DNA of 64,000 nucleotides, taken from positions 124,001-188,000 of IMG/VR virus record IMGVR_UViG_3300042691_055965; one strand, 5' to 3'. The position numbers and the translations under genes were made by a program. The notes beneath the pieces were generated by a model, which was given only the letters and a program-made list of their open reading frames with translations, was not told the origin of the DNA and ran no database searches. Numbering within the stretch: the first letter of the stretch is position 1; the number at the start of each line of letters is the position of its first letter. Of the stretch, positions 606 to 59,367 are shown one piece after another.

Positions 606-613
606 TATAAATA
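606..613 (-). promoter_or_regulatory. TATTTATA element (putative phage promoter) for the helicase
   Basis: TATAAATA on + is TATTTATA on -, 5 nt upstream of the helicase ATG. Confidence 0.55.
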
Positions 614-647
614 AAAATAGTAAATTCTAATAAATAATCAATTAAAG

Positions 648-655
648 TATTTATA
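648..655 (+). promoter_or_regulatory. TATTTATA element (putative late promoter)
   Basis: 3 nt upstream of ATG 659; the same motif recurs before most structural genes. Confidence 0.6.
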
Positions 656-658
656 GAT

Positions 659-1174
659 ATGGCACAAAATAAAGTTCCAATTACAAGATTAAATAAATTT
701 TTTTCAGAAGAAGATTTCAATTTGGATATTGAAATGGGTTCTGAATGGTTGCATGGTGATATGAATTTTACACTTGTGTTGTATAGGGTTGATAGACAAA
801 AAACAGATAAAGATGATGTTTATGGTGAAACAACGGAAGACGGTATACAATTTTTACCACCTGTCGAATTTAAAGGATTAGTAAAAATAGAAGCACCAAC
901 TAATGTCGACTTGGGTACTTCTAAACTTGCTCAATCAGAACCAGGTAATTTGACAGTCAGTGTTTACCAAAGTTATTTAGATGACATGAACATAGAAATA
1001 TCATTTGGTGATTATATTGGTTATTACGAAACGGAAGATTTTGTAAGATTTTATTCTGTTGTAAATGACGGAAGGGTGTTTGGTGATAATAAGCACACAT
1101 ATGGTGGATACAAAAGATTTTATAGAACAATCACGGCATCACCTGTTAACACAAATGAATTCAAAGGATTATAA
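659..1174 (+). CDS. putative neck/head-completion protein (T4 gp14-like)
   Basis: 171 aa; DDVYGE motif and GD..GY pattern typical of head-closure/neck proteins; lies upstream of the tail terminator and sheath. Confidence 0.55.
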   Translation: MAQNKVPITRLNKFFSEEDFNLDIEMGSEWLHGDMNFTLVLYRVDRQKTDKDDVYGETTEDGIQFLPPVEFKGLVKIEAPTNVDLGTSKLAQSEPGNLTVSVYQSYLDDMNIEISFGDYIGYYETEDFVRFYSVVNDGRVFGDNKHTYGGYKRFYRTITASPVNTNEFKGL

Positions 1175-1176
1175 TA

Positions 1177-2406
1177 ATGGCTTTACCAAAAAAAATAAAA
1201 AAAACTTTACCTTTGATTCCTACCAAAACTGGTAAGGAACGTAGGGAAGAATTACTTCAAGACATAACAAAAGATGGGACTTATCTTCCAAAAGGGGTTT
1301 TACATGCCGACTTGGATAAAGGAATGTTAGATTTTGTTAAAGATAAACTTGAGCTTGTGGTTGACAAAAAAAAAGTCCCAACAATAGATAGAATCATTAC
1401 CAACCAAAGTTGGGCACAATTTACACAAACTTGGGATTTTCAAGATTTAGATAAAAACATAACGTTACCTTTTATCACAACATTAAGGGCTCCCGAAGTA
1501 AAGTACGGTACAAATAATGCGGGTAGAGCAAACATACCTGAAAGACGACAATTTTTTTATTATACAGTACCCACTTGGGACGGACAAAGAAAAGGTGCTG
1601 ATGTTTATAAAATACCACAACCAATCCCTGTGGACTTAACCTTTACGGTTAAATTATTTTGTAATAGAATGCGTGAAGTCAATGAGTTCAACAAAATTTT
1701 GATGAGGACTTTCACATCTAAACAAGCTTACACACAAATAAAAGGACATTATATTCCATTAACGTTAGAAGATGTTAGTGATGAATCTGCTAAAGAATTA
1801 GAAAAAAGGAAATATTATATTGCAAGTTATAAGATTTTGATGATGGGACTTTTAATTGATGAAGAAGAATTTGAAGTTACACCAGCAATTTCAAGGCAAC
1901 TAACGTTGTTTGAATTTACAACAAACAATAGAAAAAAACGTGCAGTAATTGAACCGTCAAATCCAACAAACTTCGATTTAGATTTTACATTCGTAACAGG
2001 GAACACACAACTTACTGAAGTTTTTAGATATGATGCTGATATTGTTGTTGATAGTATCGTGAATTTAGATAACTGTTATTCAGTAACATATTCTTCAATA
2101 ACAAATAACACCCTAACGTACACTGATTGTTCAGGTGTTATCACTACAGTCCCAACCAATTCAGGTGATACTAATACTATATGTGTAAAATCAGCAACAG
2201 CACCAACATTCACGGTTTCATCGGGTGGAACAATTACTGAAGGGGTGTCTTGTGCTTCAAGTTATTCTGTGTATATAAACAACAATTATATTGGAGATAA
2301 TGTTCCTGTGATACAAATTAGTAGTGGTGATACCTTAAAAATAATTGCTTACAAAAATAACCCATCTGAAGTTTCGATTATTAAAACTAAAGTGTCACTT
2401 ATTTAA
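1177..2406 (+). CDS. putative tail terminator/sheath stabiliser (T4 gp15-like) with a C-terminal beta-rich, Cys-containing extension
   Basis: LPFIT..R and P.PVDLTFTV segments resemble gp15-type proteins; directly upstream of sheath; Ser/Thr-rich C-terminal domain. Confidence 0.55.
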   Translation: MALPKKIKKTLPLIPTKTGKERREELLQDITKDGTYLPKGVLHADLDKGMLDFVKDKLELVVDKKKVPTIDRIITNQSWAQFTQTWDFQDLDKNITLPFITTLRAPEVKYGTNNAGRANIPERRQFFYYTVPTWDGQRKGADVYKIPQPIPVDLTFTVKLFCNRMREVNEFNKILMRTFTSKQAYTQIKGHYIPLTLEDVSDESAKELEKRKYYIASYKILMMGLLIDEEEFEVTPAISRQLTLFEFTTNNRKKRAVIEPSNPTNFDLDFTFVTGNTQLTEVFRYDADIVVDSIVNLDNCYSVTYSSITNNTLTYTDCSGVITTVPTNSGDTNTICVKSATAPTFTVSSGGTITEGVSCASSYSVYINNNYIGDNVPVIQISSGDTLKIIAYKNNPSEVSIIKTKVSLI

Positions 2407-2556: not shown

Positions 2557-2573
2557 ATTAATAAATATTTTTT

Positions 2574-2593: not shown

Positions 2594-2653
2594 TTTTTTC
2601 ATACTATATGTCCTAATAAAATAATCAACAAAGTTTTTTACAGATTTTGAACA

Positions 2654-2661
2654 TATTTATA
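2654..2661 (+). promoter_or_regulatory. TATTTATA element upstream of the tail sheath
   Basis: Exact motif in the intergenic region. Confidence 0.6.
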
Positions 2662-2693
2662 TAGTAAAATAAATCTATATATAAATTTTAAAA

Positions 2694-5600
2694 ATGGCAT
2701 CTACAAACAAAGTATTCGTTTCGCCTGGAGTTTATACTTCAGAAAGAGATTTAACTTTTGTTGCCCAAAGTGTGGGGGTAACTACATTGGGGATTGTTGG
2801 TGAAACCTTACAGGGTCCAGCCTTCGAACCTATTTTCATAACTAATTTCGACGAATATCAAGTATATTTCGGTGGAACAAGTCCTGAAAAATTCACAAAC
2901 ACACAAATACCTAAATACGAAACATCTTATATTGCAAAAGCGTATTTGCAACAATCAAATCAATTATTTGTTACAAGAGTTTTAGGTTTGTCAGGTTATG
3001 ACGCTGGACCGTCTTGGTCAATTACAACTATTGGTAATGTTGATCCAGGAACTATTGGTTTATCTGCAAATACATCAGGTGTACAAATCGTTAACTTTAC
3101 TGGAACTACAGGCGGAAGTTCTAACGTTGTTATTACAGGTACATTACCATCTCTTATTTCATCAGATTTTTACAATCCATACACTACATTCAACGGGGGT
3201 ACATCTTCTTTGAATGCTAATTTCCAATCGTTTATTGCAAACGAAATCGTTTACCAATCAACCGCATCTTTAAATGCTCAATCAGGTACAACCGCATTAT
3301 TTTGGGGTACAGTAAGTGATGCGACTTTTAACTCTGTTACAGGTGCAACAATTGGTGCAGGATTAAGTGCGTATTCAGAAACTTTTGGTGTAAGTAATGT
3401 ATTATTATCTCAAGCAAATTTATCAGCAACAACAAACGATCCTTGGTACTACGCATTATTTGACTATTCACAAGTTGCAAGTGTTGGTTCTTACGATGGT
3501 TATGGTTTTGGTACTACTTTAGGAGCAATCAATTCTATCGGTGTTGGTTCTTATTCAGGTTATTGTATTATTTCAGGTACAACATATTCAGGTACACCGT
3601 ATTCAGGTTGGGATGATTTAGTTATTGCAACTTTAAGAAGTAGAGGTATCACTAACTATTCTTCAACACAACACGGGCCATTGTATCAAGTTACAGGTAT
3701 AACCGATGTTCAAATGGTTTGTACTGGTTCATATTCGGCGGTAACTAAAGACCCATATGCAACATTTGTTGTAAGTGGTATTACAAAAGATGCTGATACG
3801 TTCACTTTTGAAACATCATTGTTAAGTACGGATACTGAATATCTTTCTAAAGTATTTGGAAGAAGTAACTTTGGTAAAGATAGAACTGAAGTTCCTTTAT
3901 TTGTTGAAGAAGTTTATTCAAGTTTATTATTGAACGGATACAGACAAGGTAAGGTACGAGGTTTGAATTGTGATTTAATCGAATTGGATAGTGCGGTTTC
4001 ACAAGCATCAGGTTCAATAGGTTTTTATTTAGAACAATATCAAACACCAGAAACCCCTTATTTGGTTTCTGAACTTCGTGGTAATAAAGTTTATAAGTTA
4101 TTTAAGTTCAAACTTATTTCTGATGGAAATGCTGCAAACAGACTTGTTAAGATTTCAATTGGAAACGTTTCTTTTAACAATGGAACATTTGATGTATTTG
4201 TCAGAGACTTCTATGACAACGATCAAAACGTAAGAGTTATCGAAAGTTTCACGAATTGTTCATTAAATCCATCTTTGAATAATTATGTAGCAAACAAAAT
4301 AGGTACAGCTAATGGTGAATACAACTTAAATTCTAAATACATAATGTTAGAAATGAGTGATGAAGCACCTGAAGATGCACTTCCTTGTGGATTTGAAGGT
4401 TACATTATGAGAAACTATAATCAAGCACAACCACCATTTATAGTTTACAAAACAAGATACTTACAACCTGGTGACGTTATTTACAACCCACCATTTGGTT
4501 CTACAAGTGGAGCTGATAATCCTGTTATTTCAAACGGTGAAAACCCAAGAAAGGCATACTTAGGTATATCTAATATTACTGGTGTTGACTATGATTATTT
4601 TGAATACAAAGGTAAACAATTACCTGCTAATTTAGAAACTGATACTACAGGTCCAAGTTGGACTTATCAAATCAAAGGGTTCCACATGGATAGTGGGGCA
4701 ACTGTGGTAACTATGTTTGATACATTAACATCAGCAACTACACAAGCGTTTGAAGTAGGTGCTGGAAGTTTTAATTCAGAACCAACTGATCCTGATAACC
4801 CTTATTACAGATTGAACACACGTAAATTTACTTTGTATCCTTATGGTGGTTTCGATGGATGGGATATCTATAGAGAATATAGAACAAACAGTGACACATA
4901 TGCTCTTGGACAAACAGGTTATAAATATGGTGCGGCACCATCATCACAATTCCCTACAGCAACAGGATGGGGAGCGTTCAAACAAATTTCAGGTCCTAAT
5001 CAAGAAGTGTGGGCAAATACTGACTATTACGCATACAAATGGGGACAAACAACTTTTGCTAACCCTGAAGCGGTAAACATTAACGTATTTACAACACCTG
5101 GTATTGATTATGTTAACAACTCAAATCTTGTTGAAGATGCGATTGATATGGTTGAAACAGATAGAGCGGATTCAATTTACATATGTACTACACCTGATTT
5201 CAACTTGTTCTTACCAACATTTAGTGATGTAACAGAAGGTTTAATTTATCCACAAGAAGCGGTAGACAACCTTGAAGAAACAGGAATTGATTCAAACTAT
5301 ACAGCAACCTATTATCCTTGGGTATTGACAAGGGATTCAGTTAATAACACACAGATTTATTTACCAGCAACTGCTGAAGTAACTAAAAACTTGGCGTTGA
5401 CTGATAACATTGCATTCCCTTGGTTCGCATCTGCAGGTTACACAAGAGGTTTAGTAAATTCAATTAAAGCTCGTAAGAAGTTAACACAAGAAGATAGAGA
5501 TACTTTATATAAAGGAAGAATCAATCCAATTGCTACTTTTTCTGATGTGGGTACAGTAATTTGGGGTAACAAAACTTTACAAATTAGAGAGTCTGCTCTT

Positions 5601-5912
5601 GACAGAATTAATGTTAGAAGATTGTTGTTACAAGCAAGAAAACTAATTTCAGCAGTAGCAGTAAGATTACTATTCGAACAAAACGATGATAAAGTAAGAC
5701 AAGACTTCTTGGATTCTGTAAACCCAATTTTGGATTCAATTAGAAGAGATAGAGGTTTAATTGACTTTAGAGTAACTGTTTCTAACACACCTGAAGATTT
5801 AGATTCAAATACATTGACAGGTAAAATCTTCTTAAAACCAACAAGAGCGTTAGAATACATTGACATCGAGTTTGTGATTACACCAACAGGAGCATCATTT
5901 GATGACGTTTAA
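2694..5912 (+). CDS. contractile tail sheath protein
   Basis: N-terminal FVSPGVYTSERD and GPAFEP; C-terminal PWFASAGYTRG, INPI, IWGNKTL, RINVRRL and KPTRALEYIDIEF are classic sheath motifs. Confidence 0.96.
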   Translation: MASTNKVFVSPGVYTSERDLTFVAQSVGVTTLGIVGETLQGPAFEPIFITNFDEYQVYFGGTSPEKFTNTQIPKYETSYIAKAYLQQSNQLFVTRVLGLSGYDAGPSWSITTIGNVDPGTIGLSANTSGVQIVNFTGTTGGSSNVVITGTLPSLISSDFYNPYTTFNGGTSSLNANFQSFIANEIVYQSTASLNAQSGTTALFWGTVSDATFNSVTGATIGAGLSAYSETFGVSNVLLSQANLSATTNDPWYYALFDYSQVASVGSYDGYGFGTTLGAINSIGVGSYSGYCIISGTTYSGTPYSGWDDLVIATLRSRGITNYSSTQHGPLYQVTGITDVQMVCTGSYSAVTKDPYATFVVSGITKDADTFTFETSLLSTDTEYLSKVFGRSNFGKDRTEVPLFVEEVYSSLLLNGYRQGKVRGLNCDLIELDSAVSQASGSIGFYLEQYQTPETPYLVSELRGNKVYKLFKFKLISDGNAANRLVKISIGNVSFNNGTFDVFVRDFYDNDQNVRVIESFTNCSLNPSLNNYVANKIGTANGEYNLNSKYIMLEMSDEAPEDALPCGFEGYIMRNYNQAQPPFIVYKTRYLQPGDVIYNPPFGSTSGADNPVISNGENPRKAYLGISNITGVDYDYFEYKGKQLPANLETDTTGPSWTYQIKGFHMDSGATVVTMFDTLTSATTQAFEVGAGSFNSEPTDPDNPYYRLNTRKFTLYPYGGFDGWDIYREYRTNSDTYALGQTGYKYGAAPSSQFPTATGWGAFKQISGPNQEVWANTDYYAYKWGQTTFANPEAVNINVFTTPGIDYVNNSNLVEDAIDMVETDRADSIYICTTPDFNLFLPTFSDVTEGLIYPQEAVDNLEETGIDSNYTATYYPWVLTRDSVNNTQIYLPATAEVTKNLALTDNIAFPWFASAGYTRGLVNSIKARKKLTQEDRDTLYKGRINPIATFSDVGTVIWGNKTLQIRESALDRINVRRLLLQARKLISAVAVRLLFEQNDDKVRQDFLDSVNPILDSIRRDRGLIDFRVTVSNTPEDLDSNTLTGKIFLKPTRALEYIDIEFVITPTGASFDDV

Positions 5913-5950
5913 TAAAAAAGGGGGTAGAAATACCCCCATAATTTATTTTT
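5913..5950. terminator. intrinsic terminator hairpin, possibly bidirectional
   Basis: GGGGGTA-GAAA-TACCCCC (5920-5937) with an A-tract upstream and a T-rich tract downstream. Confidence 0.75.
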
Positions 5951-5962
5951 TATTTAATAGAT

Positions 5963-6978: not shown

Positions 6979-7040
6979 CTTATACTAGTAGTATATTTTC
7001 AAAATAGACAAAAGTAAATAGAAAAAAATAAAACAATAAA

Positions 7041-7047
7041 TATTTAT
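7041..7047 (+). promoter_or_regulatory. TATTTAT element upstream of the tail tube
   Basis: Motif in the intergenic region. Confidence 0.55.
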
Positions 7048-7077: not shown

Positions 7078-7566
7078 ATGGCTGATTTGTTAATGAAAAT
7101 GCCCTTTCAGTATGAACCTAAAAGAGCTAACCGATTTATAATTACTTTCCCAACATCCTTGGGTATCAACTCTTGGTATGTTGAAAGTACGTCACGACCG
7201 AGTATTAAAATAGAATCCAAAGATATTCCTTTCTTAAATACTAAAACTTATGTTGCTAGTACTTTTGAATGGGAAACAATTAATGTAAAGTTTAGAGATC
7301 CAATCGGACCTTCTGCATCACAAGCATTAATGGAATGGGTTCGATTACACGCTGAATCAGTAACAGGACGTATGGGTTATGCTGCTGGTTATAAAAAAGA
7401 TGTTGATTTGGAACTTTTAGACCCAACGGGGGTTGCTGTTGAAAAATGGATTTTACAAGGATGTTTCTTAGAAGGTGTTAAATTTGGTGACTTAGGTTAC
7501 GATAAAGCGGATATCATGACTGTTGATGCTACACTTCGTCCTGACAGATGTATATTAGTTTACTAA
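7078..7566 (+). CDS. tail tube protein (T4 gp19-like)
   Basis: 162 aa; EPKRANRF, RP, WETINVKFRD, EW, YKKD..L..LDP.G..VEKW.L.G motifs; follows the sheath. Confidence 0.92.
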   Translation: MADLLMKMPFQYEPKRANRFIITFPTSLGINSWYVESTSRPSIKIESKDIPFLNTKTYVASTFEWETINVKFRDPIGPSASQALMEWVRLHAESVTGRMGYAAGYKKDVDLELLDPTGVAVEKWILQGCFLEGVKFGDLGYDKADIMTVDATLRPDRCILVY

Positions 7567-7613: not shown

Positions 7614-7642
7614 TTTACATAAAATTCTTGTAGACTTATACT
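7614..7642 (+). promoter_or_regulatory. possible sigma70-like promoter
   Basis: TTTACA-N17-TATACT just after the terminator and before ATG 7656; the AT-rich context weakens it. Confidence 0.35.
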
Positions 7643-8554: not shown

Positions 8555-8562
8555 TATTTATA
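8555..8562 (+). promoter_or_regulatory. TATTTATA element
   Basis: Exact motif 15 nt before ATG 8578. Confidence 0.6.
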
Positions 8563-8577: not shown

Positions 8578-10548
8578 ATGCTACTATTTTTTACAGACCC
8601 AACCCTTGGTGAATTTTCAACTAAAGGTGAAACTTTTATGGGGATTGTCGAACAATTAAGATTATCATTAAAAGAGGGTATTGTACCTGAAACTGCCACT
8701 ACAACTATTACCGCAATGGACAACGAAGCAAAAAAACTTGCTCGTACAATAGGTAGCGGTGTCGTTGGAAATACAGATGACTTTAGGGAACAGTTATTTA
8801 CTATTTCTAAAAATGTAGTTGAGATAGGTTTAAGTTTTACTGATGTTACAGATGTAGTTGGTGATTTAGTGGCTGAAACAAAAAAATTGACTTTACCTTC
8901 AACCCAAGCAACAACAAAGATGTTAGAATTTTCAAAGGCGGTAGGACAAACTAGTAAAGAAACAGGTAAAATGGTTGGACAATTCATGACATTGACTTTT
9001 GGACAAAAAACCGCAATCAATGAAATGTCTAAAATAGCAAAACTTGCAAGACAAACCGGATTAGATGCTAAAACTCTTTTGAATACTATGTCTACTGAAT
9101 TGGCTAAAGTTAATTCGTACAATTTTAGAAATGGAAAAGATGGATTAAGTAAAATGGCGGCAGAAGCACAAAGGTTAAATACTACACTAAGTGATATAGG
9201 TGCATTTGCTTTGGCTGATAAATTAATAGACCCAGAAAATGCAATTGAAGTTGCAACAAGTATGAGTATGATAGGTGGTGCGGTTGAGGGAATGACTAAT
9301 CCATTTGCTTTAATGAATGACGCAGCAAACAACGTAGAAAATCTCCAAACTAAAATGATAGAAATGGCAAAAGGTGCCTTTAAAGTCAATGAAGCAACCG
9401 GAGAAATTGAAACAAACTTTATTGCTCAACAACGGTTAAGGGCTCAAATAGAATCGACTGGGGGAGATTATGAAAAGTTAATGTCACTTGGAAGAACGGC
9501 AGCAAAAGAACAACTAGTTCAAAACAAACTTTTATCGTCTGGTGTTGATTTGTCGAAAGTATCAGAGGAACAAATGAATCTTGTGAAATCTTTGACTGAA
9601 ATTGGTGAAGGAGGTAAATTAGAATTAAGAATACCTGGTTTTGAACAAACCGATTTGGTTAGTGCGATTGAAAAAAATCCCACACAGTTAACTGATGCTT
9701 TGAAAAAATATCAAGAAATGGCAGCATTGTCTGATAGGGATTTGGCAGAAAAAAGTTTGAATTTGGAAGAATTACAACAAATAGATACCCGTATAATTAG
9801 AGATGTTGTACTAACAAATCTTGGAAAAACTACTAGAGATCAACTTTTACTAGATATGGTTAATGCTCAAAAAGAGTTAGGTGGTAAGTTTGAAACTACT
9901 GCAGGTGTATTGGGAAAAGGGGCTGAAGAATTTATAACCGCTAGAGGACTACAACAGTTTTTTAATGCCGAAAAAACTAAAGTGGAAGGTAATTTGGGAT
10001 TAACGAAGGAAGATGTTAGAATTGCGGCTGAAAAAAGGGCAAGTAAAGCAAAATTGAAAACATTAAAATTTGATGCGGCTTCAGGTGTACTTAATGAAGA
10101 AGATGCTGCGTTTGGATCGACTAACACCAAAGTACTTTCTTTGGGTAAAGGTGAAATGTTTAAATTTATAAAAGAAGATGAGGCTATTTTTGCTCCAAAT
10201 GCAATAGAAAATCTTGGTATATTAAAAGATGTTTATATGCAAACAATGGGTGTGGCAAAATCAATACCTTCAGAAGTAAAATTAATCGAACCATCGGCGA
10301 CAAAAACAGGAGAAATAGCAAAACAAACAGTAGAAACAAACACAAATGTTGTAACGACTAATAAAAATGAGGACACCATTAATCTCAATATAAATCTAAA
10401 TATTGATGGAAAAAATCTACCAAACAACCTATCAGATATGTTATTTAAAAATCCATCGACTGTAAGAGAGTTAGAAAATAAAGTTATGGACACTTTAGAT
10501 AAACAAGACAGATTAAAAACAAGTAAAGGTAGATTTATTAAAAGATAA
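8578..10548 (+). CDS. tape measure protein
   Basis: 656 aa, Ala/Lys/Glu/Met-rich and helical; directly after tube and chaperones; C-terminal INLNINLNIDG segment. Confidence 0.75.
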   Translation: MLLFFTDPTLGEFSTKGETFMGIVEQLRLSLKEGIVPETATTTITAMDNEAKKLARTIGSGVVGNTDDFREQLFTISKNVVEIGLSFTDVTDVVGDLVAETKKLTLPSTQATTKMLEFSKAVGQTSKETGKMVGQFMTLTFGQKTAINEMSKIAKLARQTGLDAKTLLNTMSTELAKVNSYNFRNGKDGLSKMAAEAQRLNTTLSDIGAFALADKLIDPENAIEVATSMSMIGGAVEGMTNPFALMNDAANNVENLQTKMIEMAKGAFKVNEATGEIETNFIAQQRLRAQIESTGGDYEKLMSLGRTAAKEQLVQNKLLSSGVDLSKVSEEQMNLVKSLTEIGEGGKLELRIPGFEQTDLVSAIEKNPTQLTDALKKYQEMAALSDRDLAEKSLNLEELQQIDTRIIRDVVLTNLGKTTRDQLLLDMVNAQKELGGKFETTAGVLGKGAEEFITARGLQQFFNAEKTKVEGNLGLTKEDVRIAAEKRASKAKLKTLKFDAASGVLNEEDAAFGSTNTKVLSLGKGEMFKFIKEDEAIFAPNAIENLGILKDVYMQTMGVAKSIPSEVKLIEPSATKTGEIAKQTVETNTNVVTTNKNEDTINLNINLNIDGKNLPNNLSDMLFKNPSTVRELENKVMDTLDKQDRLKTSKGRFIKR

Positions 10549-10564: not shown

Positions 10565-10571
10565 TATTTAT
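10565..10571 (+). promoter_or_regulatory. TATTTAT element
   Basis: AATCTATTTAT, same context as at 8551-8561. Confidence 0.6.
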
Positions 10572-10587: not shown

Positions 10588-13500
10588 ATGGAAAGTCCAT
10601 TGTCTTTTAATTCAAGTGAAAACTTTAGAAAAAAACTATTGGTAAGAAATTTACAACCCTATTCAGTGAATGGTGTTTTTAATGTGCCAAAGTTAGAAAA
10701 CAAAAAAGAAGTTATTTTGGTTGACTATTCTGTTATAGATTCACCTGAAATTGAAAAAGAACAAAAAAATCAAGAAAAAAAAATAATATCCAAAAACAAA
10801 TATAACCCAAACGACGGATTTGGTTTAGTGATTGACATTAATGCTGACAAAAACTATGAAACAAATTTTGGTAATTACGGTTTTAAAAACACGATTGGTT
10901 CTGTATTAGAAACAATTGGTAACAACTCAGAAAAGTTACTATACGTAAATAATTTATACGGTCCGGTTGATTTTTCATCATCATATGGTAACACCGTTGA
11001 TATTAATAAAAACCTTACAACAAATACTAATTTAGGTTTATATGGGTTTAATTTGACTTTTGGAAGTAAACTTGAAACGTTTGCAATACAAAAAGAAGTT
11101 GAATTAATTACAAAAAACCAATACAATCCAACAGAAAACGACAATAGGAGTACAGTTAATATTAATAATGATATTCAAACTGACGCAAACAAAGGACACT
11201 ATGAATATAAAAGTACTTTACAAAGTAAGTTACAAAATAACGGAATAGTAAAAAAAGACGAATTATTAATTGTCAATCAATATAACCCGATACAAGGACA
11301 AAGTAGTGGTGTTGTTAACATTAATAATAACAAACAAACTTTAGCAAACGAAGGTAACTATGGATTTGATAGTACTGTAGGTAGTACTTTAGAACTTAAT
11401 GGTGATTCACAAGAAATTATTCTTAGAACACTCAACAAATATAATCCTGAAAACGTACCTACAGGTTTTGGAAATACTGTAAGTTTTCCTACAGTTTCAC
11501 TATCATCCAATGCTGGACAATATGATTATGTGTCAAACGGACCAACTTTAACAACAGAACAATCACAAACAAATCAGTATGTTGTTAATATATTTGGACC
11601 GCCAAATGGTTATGGTGAAATCATAGACATTAATGCAAACGCTCAAACAAGATCGAATCAAGGTTTATATAGTTTTACATCATCAAGACCTCCACAAACC
11701 GCAGAACAATCAAGAACAATTGCTTATGTGTCAAACGTATATGGTCCTAATGACGATAATGGATATGGAAGTACCATTGTTGACATTGATATAAATTATC
11801 AGACAGAATCAAATAAGGGTGAATATGATTACACAGCATCAAGCCCAGGAAAAACTACGGAACAGTCGCAACAATACGGATACCAAAAAAATAAATTTAA
11901 TAGTGGTGAAGGTGAATTTGAACAAACAACAATAGAAGAACTTTTTCCTTCGTCAATCAATGCTCCTTATTTCAATAGTGACACTACTTTTTATTTTTTA
12001 GCATCAACATATTCACCACTTTCTATTTTAACTGAAGAAAATCCTACAGGAACCGATGGTCCTTTGAGTCAAGATTCAGATTTGGCTAAACTTGGGGCAA
12101 AACAACTTCAAAAAGAATTCAGAACACGAGTTGCTCTTGAGTTGTTCCAACAGACATTAGGAAGTAGTATTTTAACAAACTCATCTGTTACAACAATATC
12201 AGGTGAAATTAGTCCAAAACCTTCTTTCGATCCTTTTGATATATTAGGTGTTGTTACAAACAACATACCTTTAATAGAAAAAAATTATAAAATTACAGAA
12301 CCTGCGAATGTGGCGGTAGAAGCGTTAGGATTTGCGGCCAAACTTGCAGGTTTATATTCACCGTATTCATTAATACCTGGTGAATATTTTGATTACCCAA
12401 ATAGAAACTTTTTGAATCAACTTACAACAAATCCAATAGGTGCTTTCACATCAGGAGTTGGTGGGTTGTTGAATACGTTAGTTACGCCATTTATAGATTC
12501 AAGTTCAGAAAGGTTTCTTGCAAATACATCTAACGCAACAAAAAGTTTATTGTTTGGGCAATTATTTTACAACACATATCGACCACGTTACAGGTTGGAT
12601 TCGGCGAATGCAAATCTAACAGCACCAAAAGAAAATTTTTATATAGGTAAAACTAAAAACTTTGTAAGTGATACTGTCAGTCCTGCTAATGAAATTGCTG
12701 ACGGTGCTTTTGGTAAAAAGAATGTTGGTCCTGTTTTCGACTATGGGTTAATAGGGCAAGACTACGAAGGTAGTGAAGTTCAAAGAAAACTATTTGGATT
12801 GAAATCCTACCCTTACTACGACGCTCAAGGTGGACTACAAGGTGGTTTTTCATGGTCACCAAAAAGTAAAAATTATATAAAACCTGGACAATTAGTTGGA
12901 CCTCAAAATCAAGTTTTTCCGGGACAAACAGAATTCGAATCAGATACAACACTAAGAAGACAATTTGCGGAAACCGATTCATCAAAATTGAGTTTTACTG
13001 ACGGATCGATTTTAGACATAACACAAAAATTAGTTGAGGCGGGAGCAAAATCATCAAACACAAAAGGGCATGTAGGAAATGCAATTAATCAAGTTAGTAA
13101 AGTCTTTAATGATGGATATATAGAATTAACTAAAGGTTCAAGAGTAAGAAGATACCTAACACCAAATGCTATTCAAGAAGGTAATAAGGTTAAGGACATA
13201 GTAGGTTATGAATTTGCTAGACTTTTTACAAAAGATCGTCCTTTTGCTAATTATTCACAATTACAACAAAAAGATGGGATGGTTTATCAAGGAAGAAAGG
13301 CGTCTTATTCAGTTTTAAATAATTCATATAATTTAAATATTGCACCAATGAAAGGTGCTAGTGGGGTAGAATCATCAAATATTGTCGATGGTAAAGTAAA
13401 AAAATATATGTTTTCAATCGAAAATTTATCATGGAGAACATCAAACCGTCCTGGGTTTACCGTTGATGATTTACCAACTTGTGAAGTTGGACCGAATGGA

Positions 13501-16618: not shown

Positions 16619-16936
16619 ATGCAATACTTTAACCGATATCAAAATTTTTTAATCAATGGTAATCAGACGGTTGTTCCATATGTTACGTTATCAACAAGGA
16701 CTACTGATCAAAGATATATCTATCGTGAAAATCAAAGTAGGCTTGATAAAATAAGTTTTGAAAAATATGGTACTCCTTATTTTGGTTGGTTAATTCTTGT
16801 GGCAAACCCTATTTATGGTGGATTAGAAACTAATATACCTGACGGGGCGGTATTAAATATACCTTATCCGTTGTTGGGTGCATTATTAGACTACAAAAAT
16901 GCGATAGATACACATATTTTTTATTATGGCAGATAG
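16619..16936 (+). CDS. LysM-like baseplate wedge protein (T4 gp53/P2 gpX-like)
   Basis: RLDKIS..YG.P..GWLIL.ANP...IPDG.VL.IP. Confidence 0.8.
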   Translation: MQYFNRYQNFLINGNQTVVPYVTLSTRTTDQRYIYRENQSRLDKISFEKYGTPYFGWLILVANPIYGGLETNIPDGAVLNIPYPLLGALLDYKNAIDTHIFYYGR

Positions 16937-23380: not shown

Positions 23381-23388
23381 TATTTATA
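23381..23388 (+). promoter_or_regulatory. TATTTATA element
   Basis: Exact motif 12 nt before ATG 23401. Confidence 0.6.
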
Positions 23389-24356: not shown

Positions 24357-24387
24357 TTTGACATTTTACAAAAATTACTTATAATTG
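24357..24387 (+). promoter_or_regulatory. host-sigma (early/middle) promoter of the replication operon
   Basis: TTGACA(24358)-N16-TATAAT(24380). Also reads as Bacteroidota-type TTTG-N19-TAnnTTTG with one mismatch (TATAATTG). Confidence 0.65.
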
Positions 24388-27825: not shown

Positions 27826-27862
27826 TGGTATTTATTATTGAATCATACTTAAAACAATCAAT

Positions 27863-31215: not shown

Positions 31216-31446
31216 ATGTTACAGTCAGCGTCTAAAGATTGGGTTCAAGAATTATTTGTGAAAGAGTTTGTAAGACCTAAACTACAACCAACAGATTTTT
31301 ATTATGATAATCAAGGAAGAATGGTTATGACTGAAAATTATCATCAAAGAAGAGGTAGTTGTTGTGGTAATGGATGTCTACACTGTCCCTACGAACCCAA
31401 ACATGAAAAAGGAAACACAAACCTAAAAGAATCACTACGAAAGTAG
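31216..31446 (+). CDS. DUF5522-like cysteine-rich small protein
   Basis: FY....G..V.TE.YH..RGSCCGNGCLHCPY motif. Confidence 0.8.
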   Translation: MLQSASKDWVQELFVKEFVRPKLQPTDFYYDNQGRMVMTENYHQRRGSCCGNGCLHCPYEPKHEKGNTNLKESLRK

Positions 31447-31458
31447 TGATTTTTTTTA
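31430..31458 (+). terminator. intrinsic terminator ending the replication operon
   Basis: AATCACTAC-GAAA-GTAGTGATT plus T tract. Confidence 0.8.
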
Positions 31459-31494
31459 TTTATATAAAATACCAAGATATTATATTTATTGAAT

Positions 31495-31956
31495 ATGGCA
31501 AACGGTATTACATACGGTATAAACTTTCCATTCAGGCAAAGTCAAGTTGGTAAATACCTTTCTTTATCTGAAACTACTGATGAAGAAATAAGAACAGACT
31601 TGGTACACCTTTTATTAACAAGAAGGGGGAGTAGATACTATCTTCCTAATTTTGGTACTAGGTTGTATGAATTTATCTTTGAACCACTTGATGGTGATAC
31701 TTTTGATGGAATAAAGTCAGAAATAGAAGATTCTGTAAAGCAGTTTATACCAAATTTGACAATACAAAATATAATTGTAGAACCATATACTGAATCTGAA
31801 ATGTCAAAAGGTGATTTGAAACCTGAACAATTTGACATTCCTGTTTATCGTGTCCCTGGTGCGAATACTGAAGAATATACGGCAAAGGTACGAATAGAAT
31901 ATATAGATGAAAACAACCCATTCGGATCGAGGGAATTTATAATTATTAATTTATAA
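31495..31956 (+). CDS. baseplate wedge protein (T4 gp25/GPW-like)
   Basis: I..DL..LLLTRRGSR...PNFGT.LY..IFEP; probable start ATG 31495; TATTTAT elements at 31457 and 31483. Confidence 0.9.
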   Translation: MANGITYGINFPFRQSQVGKYLSLSETTDEEIRTDLVHLLLTRRGSRYYLPNFGTRLYEFIFEPLDGDTFDGIKSEIEDSVKQFIPNLTIQNIIVEPYTESEMSKGDLKPEQFDIPVYRVPGANTEEYTAKVRIEYIDENNPFGSREFIIINL

Positions 31957-33854: not shown

Positions 33855-33861
33855 TATTTAT
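33855..33861 (+). promoter_or_regulatory. TATTTAT element
   Basis: Motif 14 nt before ATG 33876. Confidence 0.55.
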
Positions 33862-43849: not shown

Positions 43850-43857
43850 TATTTATA
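43850..43857 (+). promoter_or_regulatory. TATTTATA element
   Basis: Exact motif 13 nt before ATG 43871. Confidence 0.6.
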
Positions 43858-50745: not shown

Positions 50746-50766
50746 ATTTTATCATATTTATATTAT

Positions 50767-51051: not shown

Positions 51052-51079
51052 ACTATTTTGATACTATTTATAAAATAAA

Positions 51080-52369: not shown

Positions 52370-52380
52370 TATTTAAGAAA

Positions 52381-55197: not shown

Positions 55198-55205
55198 TAT
55201 TTATA
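55198..55205 (+). promoter_or_regulatory. TATTTATA element
   Basis: Exact motif 11 nt before GTG 55217. Confidence 0.6.
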
Positions 55206-55216: not shown

Positions 55217-56845
55217 GTGCCAAATTTATTATTTGAAGGTTGTTGTTACGAGGGTTATCAGTATTTCACTGATGAAGCAGCTTGGATTGCAACTGGTGGA
55301 ACCGCGACTACAGGACAAACATATCATTTTTCAGGTGACCCAATAGTTCCCGATGGTTGTTATACTATAGTATCGGCATTCACATCAGGTTTTACATCTG
55401 TATCATTTACAAATTTAGATGGTGTTTATACAACACAAACAGGATGTACCGATTCTTTGTGTTTGACAGGTGTTTGTTGTAGTAATGATGTTTGCATTAA
55501 CATTTCGGTTTCAACATATAGTGCGTATAGCGGTAATTATGTTGTTGCTGGAAGTTATAATTCTTACCCTTATTGGACAGGTGCAACACAACCTGGGTAT
55601 ATTGGGTTCAATGGTACAAATTGGTGTCTTTCTGATTCACTAACCGGAACTTGTATTTTTTATGGGTCGAACCCAACATTATCAACTTGCCCTGATTTAG
55701 ATACTTCAGTTTATAATACAGGAATTTGTCCACCTGTACCAACACCATTCGATCCGTGTGGTGCATTTGATTTTGATGTTTTAGTTGCTTGTGATATACC
55801 AACACCAACTCCAACACCAACACCGACACCAACACCTACACCGACTCCCACACCAAGTCCAACACCTAATTTATGTTCAGGATTTTCTGTGTCAATATCT
55901 TTTAGTGCTACAACACCTACACCAACACCAACACCAACACCTACACCAACGCCTACGGTTTATCCTTATCCAATAACTGGACAAAGTGTGACTTTTGTTA
56001 TTGACGAAGGTTATTTTAATTGTGTTTCAATAAAACAATTACAGGATTGTGATAATGGTGAAACATATTTAGTTGCCGATCCTTTAATTTTCCAATTATC
56101 GGCAATAACCACAGGCACTACGTTCTTGGGCGCTATAAATGGAGAATTCAAGTGTGTAACATATGTGGGTGATGTTTTGGGAAGTCCATCCGATTTGTTA
56201 ACATTTATATCACTTACATACAGTGGGGATTGTAGTTCATGTATCGCGCCAACACCAACTCCAACACCTACACCAAGCCCAACACCAACACCGACACCTA
56301 CACCGACACCTACACCGACACCAACATATAGTGCGAACACATCATTCGTGTTTACATCTTGTACATCAAATTCGATGATAATTCAAAGTTTGATTCCACC
56401 TACTAACATTTCTGTTGGTAACGTTGTAAAAAATAGTTCAGGAAATTGTTTCACTTATATTGGTTATTTTGTGAATTATACTCCACCATCTGGGTTTATT
56501 TGGTCGACTATAAATTCATTTACGGGTGTTACTGCAACAACTTACACGACTTGTTTAGAGTGTTTGACACCAACACCAACACCTACACCATTATTCAATA
56601 CATATAACGGTAAAGGTGAATTCGGAGTATCGTGTCCTGTTTGTGAATTGACAAATGGTGGTACAAATGTGACTTTCTATAGGTCTTATAGTACTTTATC
56701 TTTACAGACAGGGGATTATATTTATGAAGATACTGCACTTACCATACCTGTAATATTATCATACATTAAGTACGGTGGTAAAATATACAGTGTTGATAGT
56801 AATGGTATGATAACAGAATTTTGTATAGTAAACGGTAATTGTTAA
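55217..56845 (+). CDS. Cys-rich virion protein with four (PT)n mucin-like tracts
   Basis: 542 aa, GTG start; small Cys-paired domains separated by PT tracts. Confidence 0.8.
55799..56590 (+). repeat. four (Pro-Thr)n coding tracts
   Basis: Tracts at about 55799-55867, 55910-55957, 56249-56326 and 56567-56590. Confidence 0.95.
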
Positions 56846-57146: not shown

Positions 57147-57166
57147 ACATTATATATATTAATTAA

Positions 57167-57694
57167 ATGGCAAGATTAACAGATAAAACAACAGCAACTG
57201 CAGTAACCCAAAGTAGTTTAATTCACATTGTGAATACTAATGATGTTACACAAAATAGTGCGGGTTCATCGTATAGAGCCGATTTAGGACAAGTAGCAAA
57301 TGCGATTGGCGGGTATCAATATTATAGTGCCGTAACAATTACATCTTCAGATATATTAACTTCTAATTCAGTTCCTTTTGAAATATTACCTAATCCTGGT
57401 GCTAATAGTTACTATGATGCTAAATTTATTATGGAATATACGTATAATACAACAGGATACGTTTCGGGTGCTGAAAGTGTTATTTCAGACGGAGTAAATA
57501 GTGTTTATGCTTTGGGTGATTTGGCAAATTTTGTTACAGATACCGTAAATATCGTGCAAAGTATTGAAACCTTACAACCCGCAAAAATGCAACCAAACAA
57601 TCCTTTGTATTTCTTCACAGAAGTCGCGGATCCAACTACAGGTGATGGTGAAATACTACTTAAAATTTGGTATACAATAAGAACATTCGGATAA
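57167..57694 (+). CDS. short fibre-like virion protein (paralog family B N-terminus)
   Basis: LTDKT...LIHIVNTNDVTQN..GSSY matches the N-terminus of 51080. Confidence 0.72.
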   Translation: MARLTDKTTATAVTQSSLIHIVNTNDVTQNSAGSSYRADLGQVANAIGGYQYYSAVTITSSDILTSNSVPFEILPNPGANSYYDAKFIMEYTYNTTGYVSGAESVISDGVNSVYALGDLANFVTDTVNIVQSIETLQPAKMQPNNPLYFFTEVADPTTGDGEILLKIWYTIRTFG

Positions 57695-57695
57695 T

Positions 57696-59345
57696 ATGGC
57701 AGGATATACTGGAAATACTTGTGATATTTTAACCATCTTCCCAATGGGTTTGATTTGTAGTTCAACAAATGCGTATACTCCATTTACAAATGATGGTGCG
57801 ATAACATTGTATATTACAGGAGGTACACCACCGTATACAATAAATTGGAGTAATGGTGCTCATTCACAAAATTTAACAAACTTACAATCAGGAAATTACA
57901 CTGCCACGGTAATTGATTACTATGGGGATTTTACAGCAACAACTACTTGTAATGTTGGATTTGATACTTTTTATTTAGAAAAATTCACAAATTGTTTGGA
58001 TTCAAACAATCAAATTTATTTTTTAGCAAATATTAATAATCAATACCAAGTTGATAAAGTTTATTCTTTAAGTTCACAACTTGGATGTTGGATTAGTGAA
58101 GGTTTACTTTTATATAGTGCTGAAACATATAGTAATTTTACAGCAACAACGGTTTCGGGACCTTTTGATACTTGTCCTGAATGTTTACCAACAGTACCTG
58201 TGATTTTTAATACTTCTGGATTGTGTTTGACACTAACATCTTTTAATGTTGTAACACAAACACAATATTATTCAGGAGGTACAATCAATGGATATCCGTC
58301 ATGGACATCCAACACATCGAATGAAGTTATTTATTTTGATAACACACAATCTAAATGGAAAGTTTCTGGATGGACGGGTGGAGGTATCCCACAACTTCAA
58401 TCAATACAAAGTCCACCAATCGGAGCTTGGACTGTAGTAGGGTTACCACAGTTATTGGCAGGTAATACTGCGGTTGCCGTAACACAAGGGGATTGTCAAG
58501 CAGTAATTGTTGCAAATATCAGTAGTACACCACCAAGTTGTGAAGGTGCAACCGATGGTTATATAAATGTAACATCGGTTATTGGCGGTACACCACCATA
58601 TACATATTCATTAGTGAATGATCAAAATTTTTATCAAATATCAAATATATTCAATGGTTTGTCAGAAGGTGGTTATACAGTATATGTTCAAGACGTTTTT
58701 GGAAATATCACTATAAGTCAAGTTAATTTGAATTCTTTAGTTAGCCCAACATTATATACGTTGAATTTAGTTGTGCAACAAGTAAATCTTGGTAACAACT
58801 CGACAACAAACCAAACTAGAAATTGGACTTACCAAGTTACAGTATCACCAGCACTTCCAATAGGTAAACAGATCAATTTTGATATAACACACGTATCAAC
58901 ATCAATTTATGGAACAACCAACAATGGTTCACCTGTATTATCTTATACCCAATCAACAGGAACTACAGGTGGTGGACAATACTTAACAAGTACAACACCA
59001 ACAACCACTTCTACTTCAGCAACAACTGTTGCATGTACCACATTAAATAATTACACACAACACGTAACAACTACAACCATAAGACAATATAACGCAAGGA
59101 TAACAGGTACATTTGGAACGGATAGTGTTTTTGGTAACGTCACACAAAGTGTAACTGTTATAAATGGTGGAACACCATGTGCAGTATTCGGTAATATTAA
59201 TGATAGTGTTTCAATAACAAATATACAATTGGTAAACCAAGCACCGTGTGAATTGGTGAACACAACCGTTCAACCCGTGTCTTTCGGTGTTTCTAAAACG
59301 GGAACACCTGGAATAGTTGGAAGTAATGTAAATGTGAGTGGATAA
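57696..59345 (+). CDS. SprB-repeat, Thr-rich virion protein
   Basis: DGAITL.ITGGTPPYTINWSNG....NL..G.Y..TV.D and PSC.G..DG.I.V....GGTPPYTYSL. Confidence 0.75.
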   Translation: MAGYTGNTCDILTIFPMGLICSSTNAYTPFTNDGAITLYITGGTPPYTINWSNGAHSQNLTNLQSGNYTATVIDYYGDFTATTTCNVGFDTFYLEKFTNCLDSNNQIYFLANINNQYQVDKVYSLSSQLGCWISEGLLLYSAETYSNFTATTVSGPFDTCPECLPTVPVIFNTSGLCLTLTSFNVVTQTQYYSGGTINGYPSWTSNTSNEVIYFDNTQSKWKVSGWTGGGIPQLQSIQSPPIGAWTVVGLPQLLAGNTAVAVTQGDCQAVIVANISSTPPSCEGATDGYINVTSVIGGTPPYTYSLVNDQNFYQISNIFNGLSEGGYTVYVQDVFGNITISQVNLNSLVSPTLYTLNLVVQQVNLGNNSTTNQTRNWTYQVTVSPALPIGKQINFDITHVSTSIYGTTNNGSPVLSYTQSTGTTGGGQYLTSTTPTTTSTSATTVACTTLNNYTQHVTTTTIRQYNARITGTFGTDSVFGNVTQSVTVINGGTPCAVFGNINDSVSITNIQLVNQAPCELVNTTVQPVSFGVSKTGTPGIVGSNVNVSG

Positions 59346-59359
59346 AATAAGATAAAAAG

Positions 59360-59367
59360 TATTTATA
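59360..59367 (+). promoter_or_regulatory. TATTTATA element
   Basis: Exact motif 4 nt before ATG 59372. Confidence 0.6.

What the first reader, a model, noticed from the sequence alone, without database searches (positions are those of the whole stretch)
606..59367. Strand-oriented TATTTAT(A) upstream element, the reverse complement of the T4 late promoter
Seen: TATTTAT(A) lies 3-32 nt upstream of starts at 648, 2654, 7041, 8555, 10565, 23381, 27829, 31457/31483, 33855, 43850, 50755, 51065, 55198 and 59360, with the variant TATTTAA at 5951 and 52370. For the two minus-strand genes it flips with the gene (606-613, 2561-2567). It is not seen before ssb or primase, which have TTGACA-type elements. 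Established: the T4 gp55 late promoter is TATAAATA on the non-template strand; this motif is its exact reverse complement. Inference: a phage-specific late promoter read by a different sigma or RNA polymerase. Spacings of 3-5 nt to the ATG imply initiation within the motif or near-leaderless mRNA.
Basis: partly seen in the sequence, partly recalled or inferred. Interest (0 to 1): 0.65.

Follow-up and report, generated by a model that had tools for sequence, protein, structure and literature searches.

The report
Phage late promoter TATTTATA, sigma-linked
A short DNA word, TATTTAT(A), sits just upstream of the virion genes of this uncultured giant phage; it is best explained as the phage's own late promoter, probably read by a so far unnamed phage sigma factor, and at about a third of the sites it should give messages with no leader.

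Summary
TATTTAT is at chance over the whole window (42 copies against 46 expected). But 15 of the 26 plus-strand copies lie in the 2.2% of the window that is intergenic.

In the 229-kb genome, 81 of 90 intergenic copies point at the next gene. It is the top upstream 7-mer found without a prior (71 against 10.7 expected).

It is invariant while its flanks drift, in 36 and in 69 distinct related contigs. It is also the top or near-top upstream word in two cultured phages, Flavobacterium phage immuto and Microcystis phage Mel-JY01. T4, run through the same pipeline, gives TATAAATA instead.

All three TATTTAT phages share an unannotated protein family (P0002, 248 aa). It has a sigma region-2 fold, and the best structural match is T4 gp55.

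The motif precedes the sheath, tube, baseplate, fibre and other virion genes. It does not precede ssb or primase.

"Reverse complement of T4" is true but incidental. Read in the same direction, the word matches TATAAATA at 6 of 8 positions and keeps both adenines that gp55 buries in deep pockets.

An A-tract 4 to 6 nt after the heptamer marks the likely start site. At 27 of 71 sites the A of the ATG falls there, so leaderless mRNA is inferred.

No RNA data could be found, so promoter function and the reading factor remain inferences.

The parts
648..655 (+). TATTTATA, then 3 nt, then ATG at 659 (171-aa ORF). Divergent partner of the minus-strand site at 606-613. Close-spaced class (heptamer + 4 nt).
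606..613 (-). TATTTATA on the minus strand, heptamer + 6 nt before the ATG of the minus-strand gene ending at 600. A second upstream copy lies at 630-636 (-).
   Evidence: gene 122, distances 13 and 36
2561..2567 (-). TATTTAT on the minus strand, 4 nt before the ATG of a 49-aa minus-strand ORF.
2654..2661 (+). TATTTATA 40 nt (first T to ATG) upstream of the tail sheath gene (2694-5912).
7041..7047 (+). TATTTAT 37 nt upstream of the tail tube gene (7078-7566). Kept in 69 of 69 distinct relatives, at 36-82 nt from the ATG.
8555..8562 (+). TATTTATA 23 nt upstream of a 656-aa ORF (8578-10548).
10565..10571 (+). TATTTAT 23 nt upstream of a 2009-aa ORF (10588-16617).
23381..23388 (+). TATTTATA 20 nt upstream of a 74-aa ORF (23401).
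27829..27835 (+). TATTTAT 34 nt upstream of the DnaB-like helicase gene (27863-29242). This is the one clear replication gene behind the motif.
31429..31456 (+). Hairpin plus T-run (terminator-like) ending directly before the motif at 31457.
31457..31464 (+). TATTTATA, the first of two copies before the gp25-like baseplate wedge gene (ATG at 31495).
31483..31489 (+). TATTTAT, then 5 nt, then ATG at 31495 (baseplate wedge operon: 31495-31956, then 31961-33802). Close-spaced class.
33855..33861 (+). TATTTAT 21 nt upstream of a 2106-aa ORF (33876-40196; DUF5122 beta-propeller repeats).
43850..43857 (+). TATTTATA 21 nt upstream of a 302-aa ORF (43871).
50755..50762 (+). TATTTATA; heptamer, then 5 nt, then ATG at 50767. 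Close-spaced class.
51065..51072 (+). TATTTATA 15 nt upstream of a 337-aa ORF (51080).
55198..55205 (+). TATTTATA 19 nt upstream of the GTG at 55217 (542-aa ORF).
59360..59367 (+). TATTTATA; heptamer, then 5 nt, then ATG at 59372 (733-aa ORF). Close-spaced class.
5951..5957 (+). Variant TATTTAA, then 5 nt, then ATG at 5963, just after the hairpin at 5920-5937. Possible weak variant; as a class it is not enriched.
52370..52376 (+). Variant TATTTAA, then 4 nt, then ATG at 52381 (virion structural protein). Possible variant site.

Best explanation
TATTTAT(A/T) is the single core element of the phage's own middle/late promoter class. Its fuller form is A-TATTTAT-W, three variable bases, then AAA. 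It sits where a -10 (or, in Bacteroidota, a -7) element sits and has no specific upstream partner.

It is read by the host RNA polymerase carrying a phage-encoded sigma-like factor. The best candidate is the unannotated 248-aa protein P0002 (genome 82399-83145, minus strand, outside the window). Its N-terminal domain has the sigma region-2 fold and remotely resembles T4 gp55.

Transcription most likely starts at an A 4-6 nt after the heptamer. Where the heptamer lies 4-6 nt from the ATG (27 of 71 sites), the mRNA would begin at the A of the AUG and be leaderless. That suits a host whose ribosomes do not use Shine-Dalgarno pairing.

Shown directly: enrichment, orientation, conservation, gene association, and co-occurrence with the P0002 family. 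Inferred: promoter activity, the reading factor, the start site, and leaderless translation.
For: Location and direction.
- 81 of 90 intergenic copies point at the next gene.
- It is the top upstream 7-mer found without a prior: 71 sense, 10.7 expected, 23 antisense.
- 40 of 63 gaps of 16-60 nt carry it, as do 19 of 32 heads of divergent gene pairs. About 7 sites lie 4-17 nt behind a hairpin plus T-run.

Conservation.
- After the P0002 gene the heptamer is invariant in 36 distinct relatives, while the upstream flank changes in length and sequence.
- It is kept before the tail tube gene in 69 of 69 distinct relatives, at 36-82 nt from the ATG.
- ATATTTAT is the top upstream 8-mer over 80 related loci: 227 against 21 expected.

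It tracks the factor rather than the host.
- Flavobacterium phage immuto: TATTTAT 33 sense, 4.6 expected, 10 antisense. It has a P0002 homologue at E 1e-18, which is its only gp55-family hit, and no Sigma70_r2 hit.
- Microcystis phage Mel-JY01: ATATTTAT 18 sense, 2.2 expected, 2 antisense. It has a P0002 homologue at E 5e-30.
- T4 control: the same pipeline returns TATAAATA at 22 sense, 2.2 expected, 5 antisense; TATTTATA is 5 sense and 22 antisense.

The factor.
- P0002 hits Sigma70_r2 and the gp55 PHROG weakly.
- All top Foldseek rows are sigma factors.
- The best VIA row is T4 gp55 (7d7d_F): Z 9.4, rmsd 2.9, 96 residues.
- A diverse family profile against gp55 gives hhalign E 1e-4 over 111 columns.
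- Against PDB sequences, only sigma factors match.

Gene class. The motif precedes the sheath, tube, gp25/gp6-like wedge, Hoc-like, tail fibre, 1456-aa virion protein and adaptor genes. It does not precede ssb, UvsX, the exonuclease or the primase.

Start site. At sites with a leader, A occupies index 11/12/13 in 29, 35 and 35 of 42 sites here, and in 25, 22 and 18 of 27 in immuto. This matches the 4-5 nt gap after the 8-bp -7 element in Flavobacterium johnsoniae (PMC6847099). It also matches the 5-nt gap in T4 (PMC1524935).

Cascade. In immuto the P0002 homologue lies in an operon headed by an early-type promoter.
Against: - There are no transcript data: no RNA run was listed. Promoter activity, timing and start site are therefore unproven.
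- All sequence matches of P0002 to sigma or gp55 are weak on their own: 16-19 bits, hhalign probability 56%.
- The gp55 structural row is tied within 1 Z unit with other sigma region-2 domains.
- P0002 has an extra 100-residue C-terminal domain that gp55 lacks. Its fold search is inconclusive.
- No gp45-type clamp was found here or in immuto, and gp33 was not searched. The T4 activation mechanism is therefore not supported.
- The motif also precedes DnaB and the operon with the SigA-like sigma gene, so 'late' is not clean.
- At heptamer + 4 nt sites the A of the ATG is one base closer than the geometry reported for the host.
Confidence: 0.72

Rival explanations
1. The motif is a variant -7 element read by the host's own primary sigma (the sigma-A of Bacteroidota). 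No phage factor would be needed.
For: Read in the same register, TATTTATW shares T-12, A-11, T-8 and T-6 with the host consensus TAHHTTTG. It also shares an AT-rich patch near -28.
Against: - The nearly invariant host positions T-7 and G-5 are A and W here.
- The genome also carries classic TATCTTTG and TATATTTG sites before other genes, so there are two discrete classes.
- The same word is the top upstream motif in Mel-JY01, a phage isolated on a cyanobacterium, whose genes more often carry Shine-Dalgarno-like leaders.
- The motif therefore follows the P0002 family and not the host phylum.
Confidence: 0.1
2. The motif is read by the phage's other sigma, the SigA/RpoD-like P0001 (271 aa, genome 195721-196536), and not by P0002.
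For: P0001 is a complete sigma with strong region 2 and region 4 matches (E 1e-43 to SigA chains).
Against: - immuto has the motif but no detectable Sigma70_r2 protein.
- No -35-type partner accompanies the motif.
- The P0001 gene itself lies in an operon behind a TATTTATA.
- TTGACA-N16/17-TATAAT-like sites before ssb and primase suit P0001 better.
Confidence: 0.07
3. The word acts at the RNA level, as a translation enhancer or ribosome landing site that replaces Shine-Dalgarno, or as an RNase processing site.
For: - It is sense-strand specific.
- A third of the sites sit at a fixed 4-6 nt from the ATG, where an SD would lie, and that spacing is conserved in 36 relatives.
- The genome lacks SD sequences: 3% of genes.
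Against: - The other two thirds lie 14-82 nt from the ATG, and this distance drifts among relatives while the word stays fixed.
- Genes inside tightly packed operons lack it although they too must be translated.
- It heads divergent gene pairs, where no upstream transcript exists to process.
- In Mel-JY01 it occurs upstream of leaders that carry GGAG.
Confidence: 0.07
4. These are ordinary T4-type TATAAATA promoters on the opposite strand, firing antisense into the preceding gene.
For: The reverse complement is exactly the T4 consensus, and the phage belongs to the wider T4 group by its sheath, gp25/gp6, gp32-like and UvsX-like genes.
Against: - The A-tract expected at a start site lies on the sense side.
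- No base preference is seen at the mirror position (positions -6 and -5).
- It would put about 70 promoters pointing away from the genes they abut.
- In T4 the same analysis finds the sense-oriented word.
Confidence: 0.02

Closest known systems
T4 late promoters (TATAAATA at -13 to -6) read by gp55 with gp33 and the gp45 sliding clamp
   Same: - A single 8-bp A/T-only element with no -35 partner.
- It precedes virion genes in a phage of the wider T4 group.
- A phage protein with a sigma region-2 fold is the likely reader.
- Read in the same direction, 6 of 8 bases are identical.
- The two adenines that gp55 buries in deep pockets (-12 and -8; PMC7892883) are kept.
- The hhalign alignment places the family's nearly invariant Y107 on gp55 Y97, and F96 on gp55 F86.
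   Different: - The two central bases are TT, not AA. These include the -9 base held in gp55's shallow pocket.
- The candidate factor is 248 aa with an extra four-helix C-terminal domain.
- No gp45-type clamp was detected.
- A third of the sites abut the ATG, whereas T4 sites lie 21-60 nt away.
Aeromonas phage Aeh1 late promoter variant CTAAATA, with a diverged gp55 (PMC1524935)
   Same: A precedent for the late promoter word and its sigma drifting together within the T4 group.
   Different: Aeh1 changes the first position. Here the centre of the word changes, and the factor is far more diverged.
Bacteroidota primary promoters: -33 TTTG and -7 TAHHTTTG, with 4-5 nt to the start site (PMC6847099)
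   Same: Same register and geometry (T-12, A-11, T-8, T-6), an AT-rich patch near -28, and A-rich leaders without Shine-Dalgarno.
   Different: - A at -7 and W at -5 replace the nearly invariant T and G.
- There is no TTTG partner.
- The word also occurs in a phage isolated on a cyanobacterium.

Membership tests
T4-type late transcription (gp55/gp33/gp45 with TATAAATA) | Promoter word TATAAATA on the non-template strand at -13 to -6 | tested here: not met
   The sense-strand word is TATTTATW, 6 of 8 identical. Own genome: TATTTATA 43 sense, 13 antisense. The T4 control gives TATAAATA 22 sense.
T4-type late transcription (gp55/gp33/gp45 with TATAAATA) | A single -10-type element with no -35 element | tested here: met
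   There is no position-specific signal from -45 to -2 except W at -16/-15. No enriched upstream k-mer was found beyond T-runs.
T4-type late transcription (gp55/gp33/gp45 with TATAAATA) | A gp55 homologue is encoded | tested here: inconclusive
   P0002 matches phrog_234 at E 0.0014-0.016. hhalign of a 59-member profile against gp55 gives E 1e-4, probability 56%, over 111 columns. The best VIA row is gp55 at Z 9.4, tied with other sigma-2 domains.
T4-type late transcription (gp55/gp33/gp45 with TATAAATA) | The sigma lacks region 4, and upstream contact is made through gp33 and the clamp | tested here: inconclusive
   P0002 has a confident four-helix C-terminal domain (pLDDT 88.8). Rows for sigma region 4 score Z 5.0-5.5 and are tied with unrelated helical proteins.
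T4-type late transcription (gp55/gp33/gp45 with TATAAATA) | gp45 sliding clamp | tested here: not met
   phrog_223 finds nothing in this contig (the contig is estimated 76% complete). It also finds nothing in the complete immuto genome. A clamp too diverged for this profile is not excluded.
T4-type late transcription (gp55/gp33/gp45 with TATAAATA) | gp33 co-activator | not tested
T4-type late transcription (gp55/gp33/gp45 with TATAAATA) | Precedes late (virion) genes and is active late | tested here: inconclusive
   The gene association is met: sheath, tube, wedge, fibre, Hoc-like and adaptor genes. DnaB also carries the motif. Timing cannot be tested because no RNA run was listed.
Sigma-70 superfamily (for P0002) | Region-2 fold | tested here: met
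   All top 50 Foldseek rows are sigma factors. VIA rows 1-10 are sigma-2 domains at Z 7.9-9.4. All six PDB sequence matches are sigma factors.
Bacteroidota sigma-A promoters (TTTG / TAHHTTTG) | T-7, T-6 and G-5 nearly invariant, with a -33 TTTG | tested here: not met
   The motif has A, T and W at these positions and no TTTG partner.

The most novel reading that the evidence does not exclude
A very large, unnamed family of phage sigma factors directs a conserved late promoter, TATTTATA. The family has at least 1,427 clusters at 50% identity. It occurs in uncultured giant myoviruses, in Flavobacterium phage immuto and in Microcystis phage Mel-JY01. It would be a sister system to T4 gp55/TATAAATA that works without the sliding clamp. 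In the branch whose genomes lack Shine-Dalgarno sequences, as Bacteroidota do, it would be wired to make leaderless late mRNAs, so that one 7-bp word sets both transcription and translation starts.
Probability: 0.4. Interest if true: 0.72.

Novelty: new variant of a known kind. Interest (0 to 1): 0.62.

Why it matters
Late promoters read by phage sigmas are textbook for T4, but nothing comparable was found in the paper library for T4-like phages of Bacteroidota or for these abundant uncultured giant phages.

- The word gives a simple annotation rule for operon heads and late genes in thousands of metagenomic contigs.
- It assigns a testable function to a protein family that is now labelled only 'hypothetical'.
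- It is a natural case of a promoter word and a sigma changing together: AA to TT at the centre, with pocket residues changed.
- It points to leaderless late mRNAs in hosts without Shine-Dalgarno sequences.

Two cultured phages, immuto and Mel-JY01, make all of this testable at the bench.

Tried and rejected
- RNA evidence: the look-up of sequencing runs listed no RNA run.
- Close DNA relatives among cultured phages: megablast found none.
- Single-sequence and narrow-profile searches of P0002 against PDB sequences gave only noise. A 59-member profile was needed.
- hhalign with the narrow alignment gave probability 5%.
- An upstream (-35-type) partner was sought by position and by k-mer and was not found.
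- A phage RNA polymerase was sought with PF00623 and PF00940 and was not found. The PF00940 control was silent, so that search is uninformative.
- The three 2,000-aa proteins have no PHROG hit. Their only Pfam hit is DUF5122 in one of them.
- TATTTAA as a variant class: 11 of 160 copies are intergenic, which is only mild enrichment. It is left as possible at three window sites.
- The TTGACA-N15-18-TAnnnT class: 7 sense against 4 antisense with a loose pattern. This is suggestive only.
- The fold of the P0002 C-terminal domain gave no row above Z 6.0.

Full report
**What the window is.** The window is bases 124001-188000 of a single 229,188-bp contig from IMG/VR, with 31% G+C and an estimated completeness of 76%. 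It encodes:
- a tail sheath, tail tube, baseplate hub and gp25/gp6-like wedge proteins;
- a gp32-like ssb, a UvsX-like recombinase, a DnaB-like helicase, a primase and a ribonucleotide reductase.

The best sheath matches are Microcystis phage Mel-JY01, Flavobacterium phage immuto and then the T4-like phages. It is therefore a distant member of the wider T4 group.

Only 3% of its genes have a Shine-Dalgarno-like sequence upstream. The figure is 4% in immuto, 17% in Mel-JY01 and 51% in T4. Classic Bacteroidota -7 boxes (TATCTTTG, TATATTTG) precede some genes outside the window. A Bacteroidota host is likely but not shown.

**The observation.** All listed coordinates are correct.

The word is not enriched over the window as a whole: 42 copies against 45.8 expected. 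The signal lies in place and direction:
- In the window, 1392 intergenic bases (2.2%) hold 15 of the 26 plus-strand copies.
- In the genome, 90 of 193 copies are intergenic (4.5% of the bases), and 81 of those 90 point at the adjacent gene.
- An unbiased k-mer scan of upstream segments, scored against a second-order Markov model of those same AT-rich segments, puts TATTTAT first: 71 sense, 10.7 expected, 23 antisense. ATATTTAT (46 against 4.6) and TATTTATA (43 against 4.6) lead the 8-mers.
- Run on T4, the same pipeline returns TATAAATA first among 8-mers: 22 sense, 2.2 expected, 5 antisense. There TATTTATA is 5 sense and 22 antisense. The method finds a known late promoter, and the direction really is opposite in the two phages.

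**Conservation.** The gene for P0002 has relatives on at least 272 IMG/VR contigs.
- In the short spacer after that gene, 36 distinct relatives (60-100% protein identity) all keep TATTTAT, followed by 4-6 nt and the ATG. The stretch between the preceding stop codon and the word varies from 0 to about 20 nt and in sequence.
- Before the tail tube gene, 69 of 69 distinct relatives keep the word. There its distance to the ATG drifts from 36 to 82 nt.
- Over 80 related loci, ATATTTAT is the top upstream 8-mer: 227 against 21 expected, with 39 antisense.

**Why a promoter.**
- The word sits at operon heads. 40 of 63 gaps of 16-60 nt have it, and genes joined by 5 nt or less have none in the gap.
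- It heads 19 of 32 divergent gene pairs. One is the pair at window 601-658, where two copies face outwards.
- About seven sites follow a hairpin plus T-run by 4-17 nt, for example window 31429-31456 and then 31457.
- Its distance to the ATG ranges from 7 to 82 nt.

A translation signal would be needed inside operons too and would keep its spacing. A processing site would need an upstream transcript, which divergent heads do not have.

**Gene class.** Genes directly behind the word that could be named are:
- tail sheath, tail tube and the gp25/gp6-like wedge operon;
- a Hoc-like protein, a tail fibre protein, a 1456-aa virion protein and a head-tail adaptor.

The exceptions are DnaB (27829) and, outside the window, the operon holding a SigA-like sigma gene.

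ssb, UvsX, the exonuclease and the primase lack the word. ssb has TTGACA-N16-TATAAT at 24358, and the primase gene has TTGACA at 62234.

**Anatomy and likely start site.**
- The logo is A, TATTTAT, W. There is no -35-type partner, only W at 15-16 nt upstream of the first T, plus T-runs.
- At sites with a leader of 17 nt or more, counting the first T as 0, positions 11, 12 and 13 are A in 29, 35 and 35 of 42 sites. In immuto the figures are 25, 22 and 18 of 27.
- In Flavobacterium johnsoniae the 8-bp -7 element spans -12 to -5, with 4-5 nt to the start site and AT-rich patches near -18 and -28 (PMC6847099). In T4 the 8-mer spans -13 to -6 (PMC1524935).
- Both geometries put the start at index 12-13, inside the A-tract. 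They also put the W patch near -28.
- In 27 of 71 sites the heptamer is followed by 4, 5 or 6 nt and then the ATG (12, 10 and 5 sites). The A of the ATG then falls on index 11, 12 or 13.

The inference is leaderless mRNA. The 11-13 nt class makes up 24 of 72 sites here, 4 of 35 in immuto, 0 of 22 in Mel-JY01 and 1 of 26 in T4. It looks like a habit of the branch without Shine-Dalgarno sequences.

**Relation to T4.** TATTTATA is indeed the reverse complement of TATAAATA, but promoters are directional. Read in the same direction the two words differ only at positions 4 and 5 (TAT-TT-ATA against TAT-AA-ATA).

In the gp55 open complex, A-12 and A-8 sit in deep pockets and A-9 in a shallow one (PMC7892883). 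In the same register the new word keeps A-12 and A-8 and changes -10 and -9.

Aeh1 already shows a late-promoter variant paired with a diverged gp55.

**Who reads it.** The genome has two sigma-like genes, both outside the window.
- P0001 (195721-196536, 271 aa) is a complete SigA/RpoD/RpoS-like sigma.
- P0002 (82399-83145, minus strand, 248 aa) matches Sigma70_r2 and the gp55 PHROG only weakly.

Other evidence supports P0002 as a sigma:
- Its model has all top 50 Foldseek rows as sigma factors.
- In the search independent of Foldseek, the best row is T4 gp55 (7d7d_F: Z 9.4, rmsd 2.9, 96 residues). This is tied with other region-2 domains.
- A 59-member profile aligns to gp55 over 111 columns (hhalign E 1e-4, probability 56%).
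- That profile matches only sigma factors in the PDB, gp55 among them.
- The alignment puts the family's nearly invariant Y107 on gp55 Y97, the residue that stacks on A-12. It puts F96 on F86, and Y105 and G109 on the pocket residues H95 and T99. This last point is inference.

The C-terminal 100 residues fold confidently into four helices (pLDDT 88.8). They have no clear match: sigma region 4 rows score Z 5.0-5.5 and are tied with unrelated proteins.

**The word follows P0002, not the host.**
- immuto (complete genome; host Flavobacterium) has a P0002 homologue, immuto35A_152, annotated as hypothetical. That homologue is its only gp55-family hit, and it has no Sigma70_r2 hit, so no P0001. TATTTAT is enriched upstream of its genes, including the sheath and baseplate genes and the gene after the P0002 homologue.
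- Mel-JY01 (isolated on a cyanobacterium) has a full-length homologue at E 5e-30. ATATTTAT is again the top upstream 8-mer (18 sense, 2.2 expected, 2 antisense), here in front of leaders that carry GGAG.
- T4 has no P0002 match and uses TATAAATA.

This pattern argues against reading by host sigma-A and against P0001.

In immuto the homologue lies in an operon headed by a repeated early-type promoter, aGTTGc-N~19-TATATTTAGGTA. That fits a cascade from early promoter, to sigma, to TATTTAT genes.

No gp45-type clamp was found here or in immuto, and no phage RNA polymerase was found (with weak controls).

**Size of the family and prior knowledge.**
- P0002 has at least 7,919 clusters at 90% identity in the word search. 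Every name that a source gives is 'hypothetical', and none has a Pfam domain.
- The exhaustive profile search finds 1,427 clusters at 50% identity at E up to 0.001.
- Paper searches for the word as a phage promoter, for Flavobacterium phage late promoters, and for immuto and Mel-JY01 found nothing relevant.

**Verdict.**
- The best explanation is a phage-specific late promoter class. It is a same-direction variant of the T4 late promoter, most likely read by an unnamed sigma-like family.
- About a third of the sites are placed to give leaderless mRNAs.
- This is a new variant of a known kind.
No RNA data could be obtained.

Noticed in passing
window 24358-24386 (before ssb), 62234 (before primase), 7614-7642 (before baseplate hub); genome 60024 and 117628: A second promoter-like class, TTGACA/TTTACA-N16-17-TATAAT/TATATT/TATACT, often just after a terminator hairpin. 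This is the classical sigma-70 consensus, which Bacteroidota primary sigma does not read. The phage's own SigA-like sigma P0001 could be its reader. Statistics are weak: 7 sense against 4 antisense with a loose pattern.
   Followed up: partly
outside the window: genome 195721-196536 (+), locus L003:1315-2130: A complete SigA/RpoD/RpoS-like sigma factor (271 aa; regions 1.2, 2 and 4; E 1e-43 to SigA chains). Its gene overlaps the preceding gene, which has a TATTTATA 16 nt before its ATG. It is absent from immuto.
   Followed up: partly
outside the window: e.g. genome 44528-44566, 73582-73621, 193450-193486, 196537-196597, 208017-208074: Classic Bacteroidota -7 boxes (TATCTTTG, TATATTTG) lie before about 14 genes. 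These are probably host-read early promoters and a pointer to a Bacteroidota host.
   Followed up: partly
window 7013-7026: AGTAAATAGAAAAA in the spacer before the tail tube promoter is kept in most of 69 relatives, about 18-21 nt upstream of TATTTAT. In a few relatives it sits next to the ATG instead. Its function is unknown.
   Followed up: no
window 10588-16617, 16926-23363, 33876-40196: Three ORFs of 2009, 2145 and 2106 aa lie in the virion gene region with no PHROG hit. Only the third has a Pfam hit (DUF5122 beta-propeller repeats). The first and third have the motif directly upstream; the second lies in the operon that begins at 10588.
   Followed up: partly
immuto (MW353176) 60-77 kb, e.g. 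67591, 69550, 76174: About 20 copies of a long early-type promoter, aGTTGc-N~19-TATATTTAGGTAtcaataattaaaac, each 26-34 nt before a small gene. One of them heads the operon with the P0002 homologue.
   Followed up: partly
window 56275-56375: A Pro/Thr-rich repeat (ccgacacctaca units) inside the 542-aa ORF that starts with GTG at 55217. ATG-only ORF calling breaks this gene up.
   Followed up: no
outside the window: genome 83145-101254 (-): A run of about 22 tightly packed minus-strand genes without any TATTTAT includes glycosyltransferases and the P0002 gene. Its head (genome about 101255-101324) has a terminator hairpin followed by TATATTTT.
   Followed up: no
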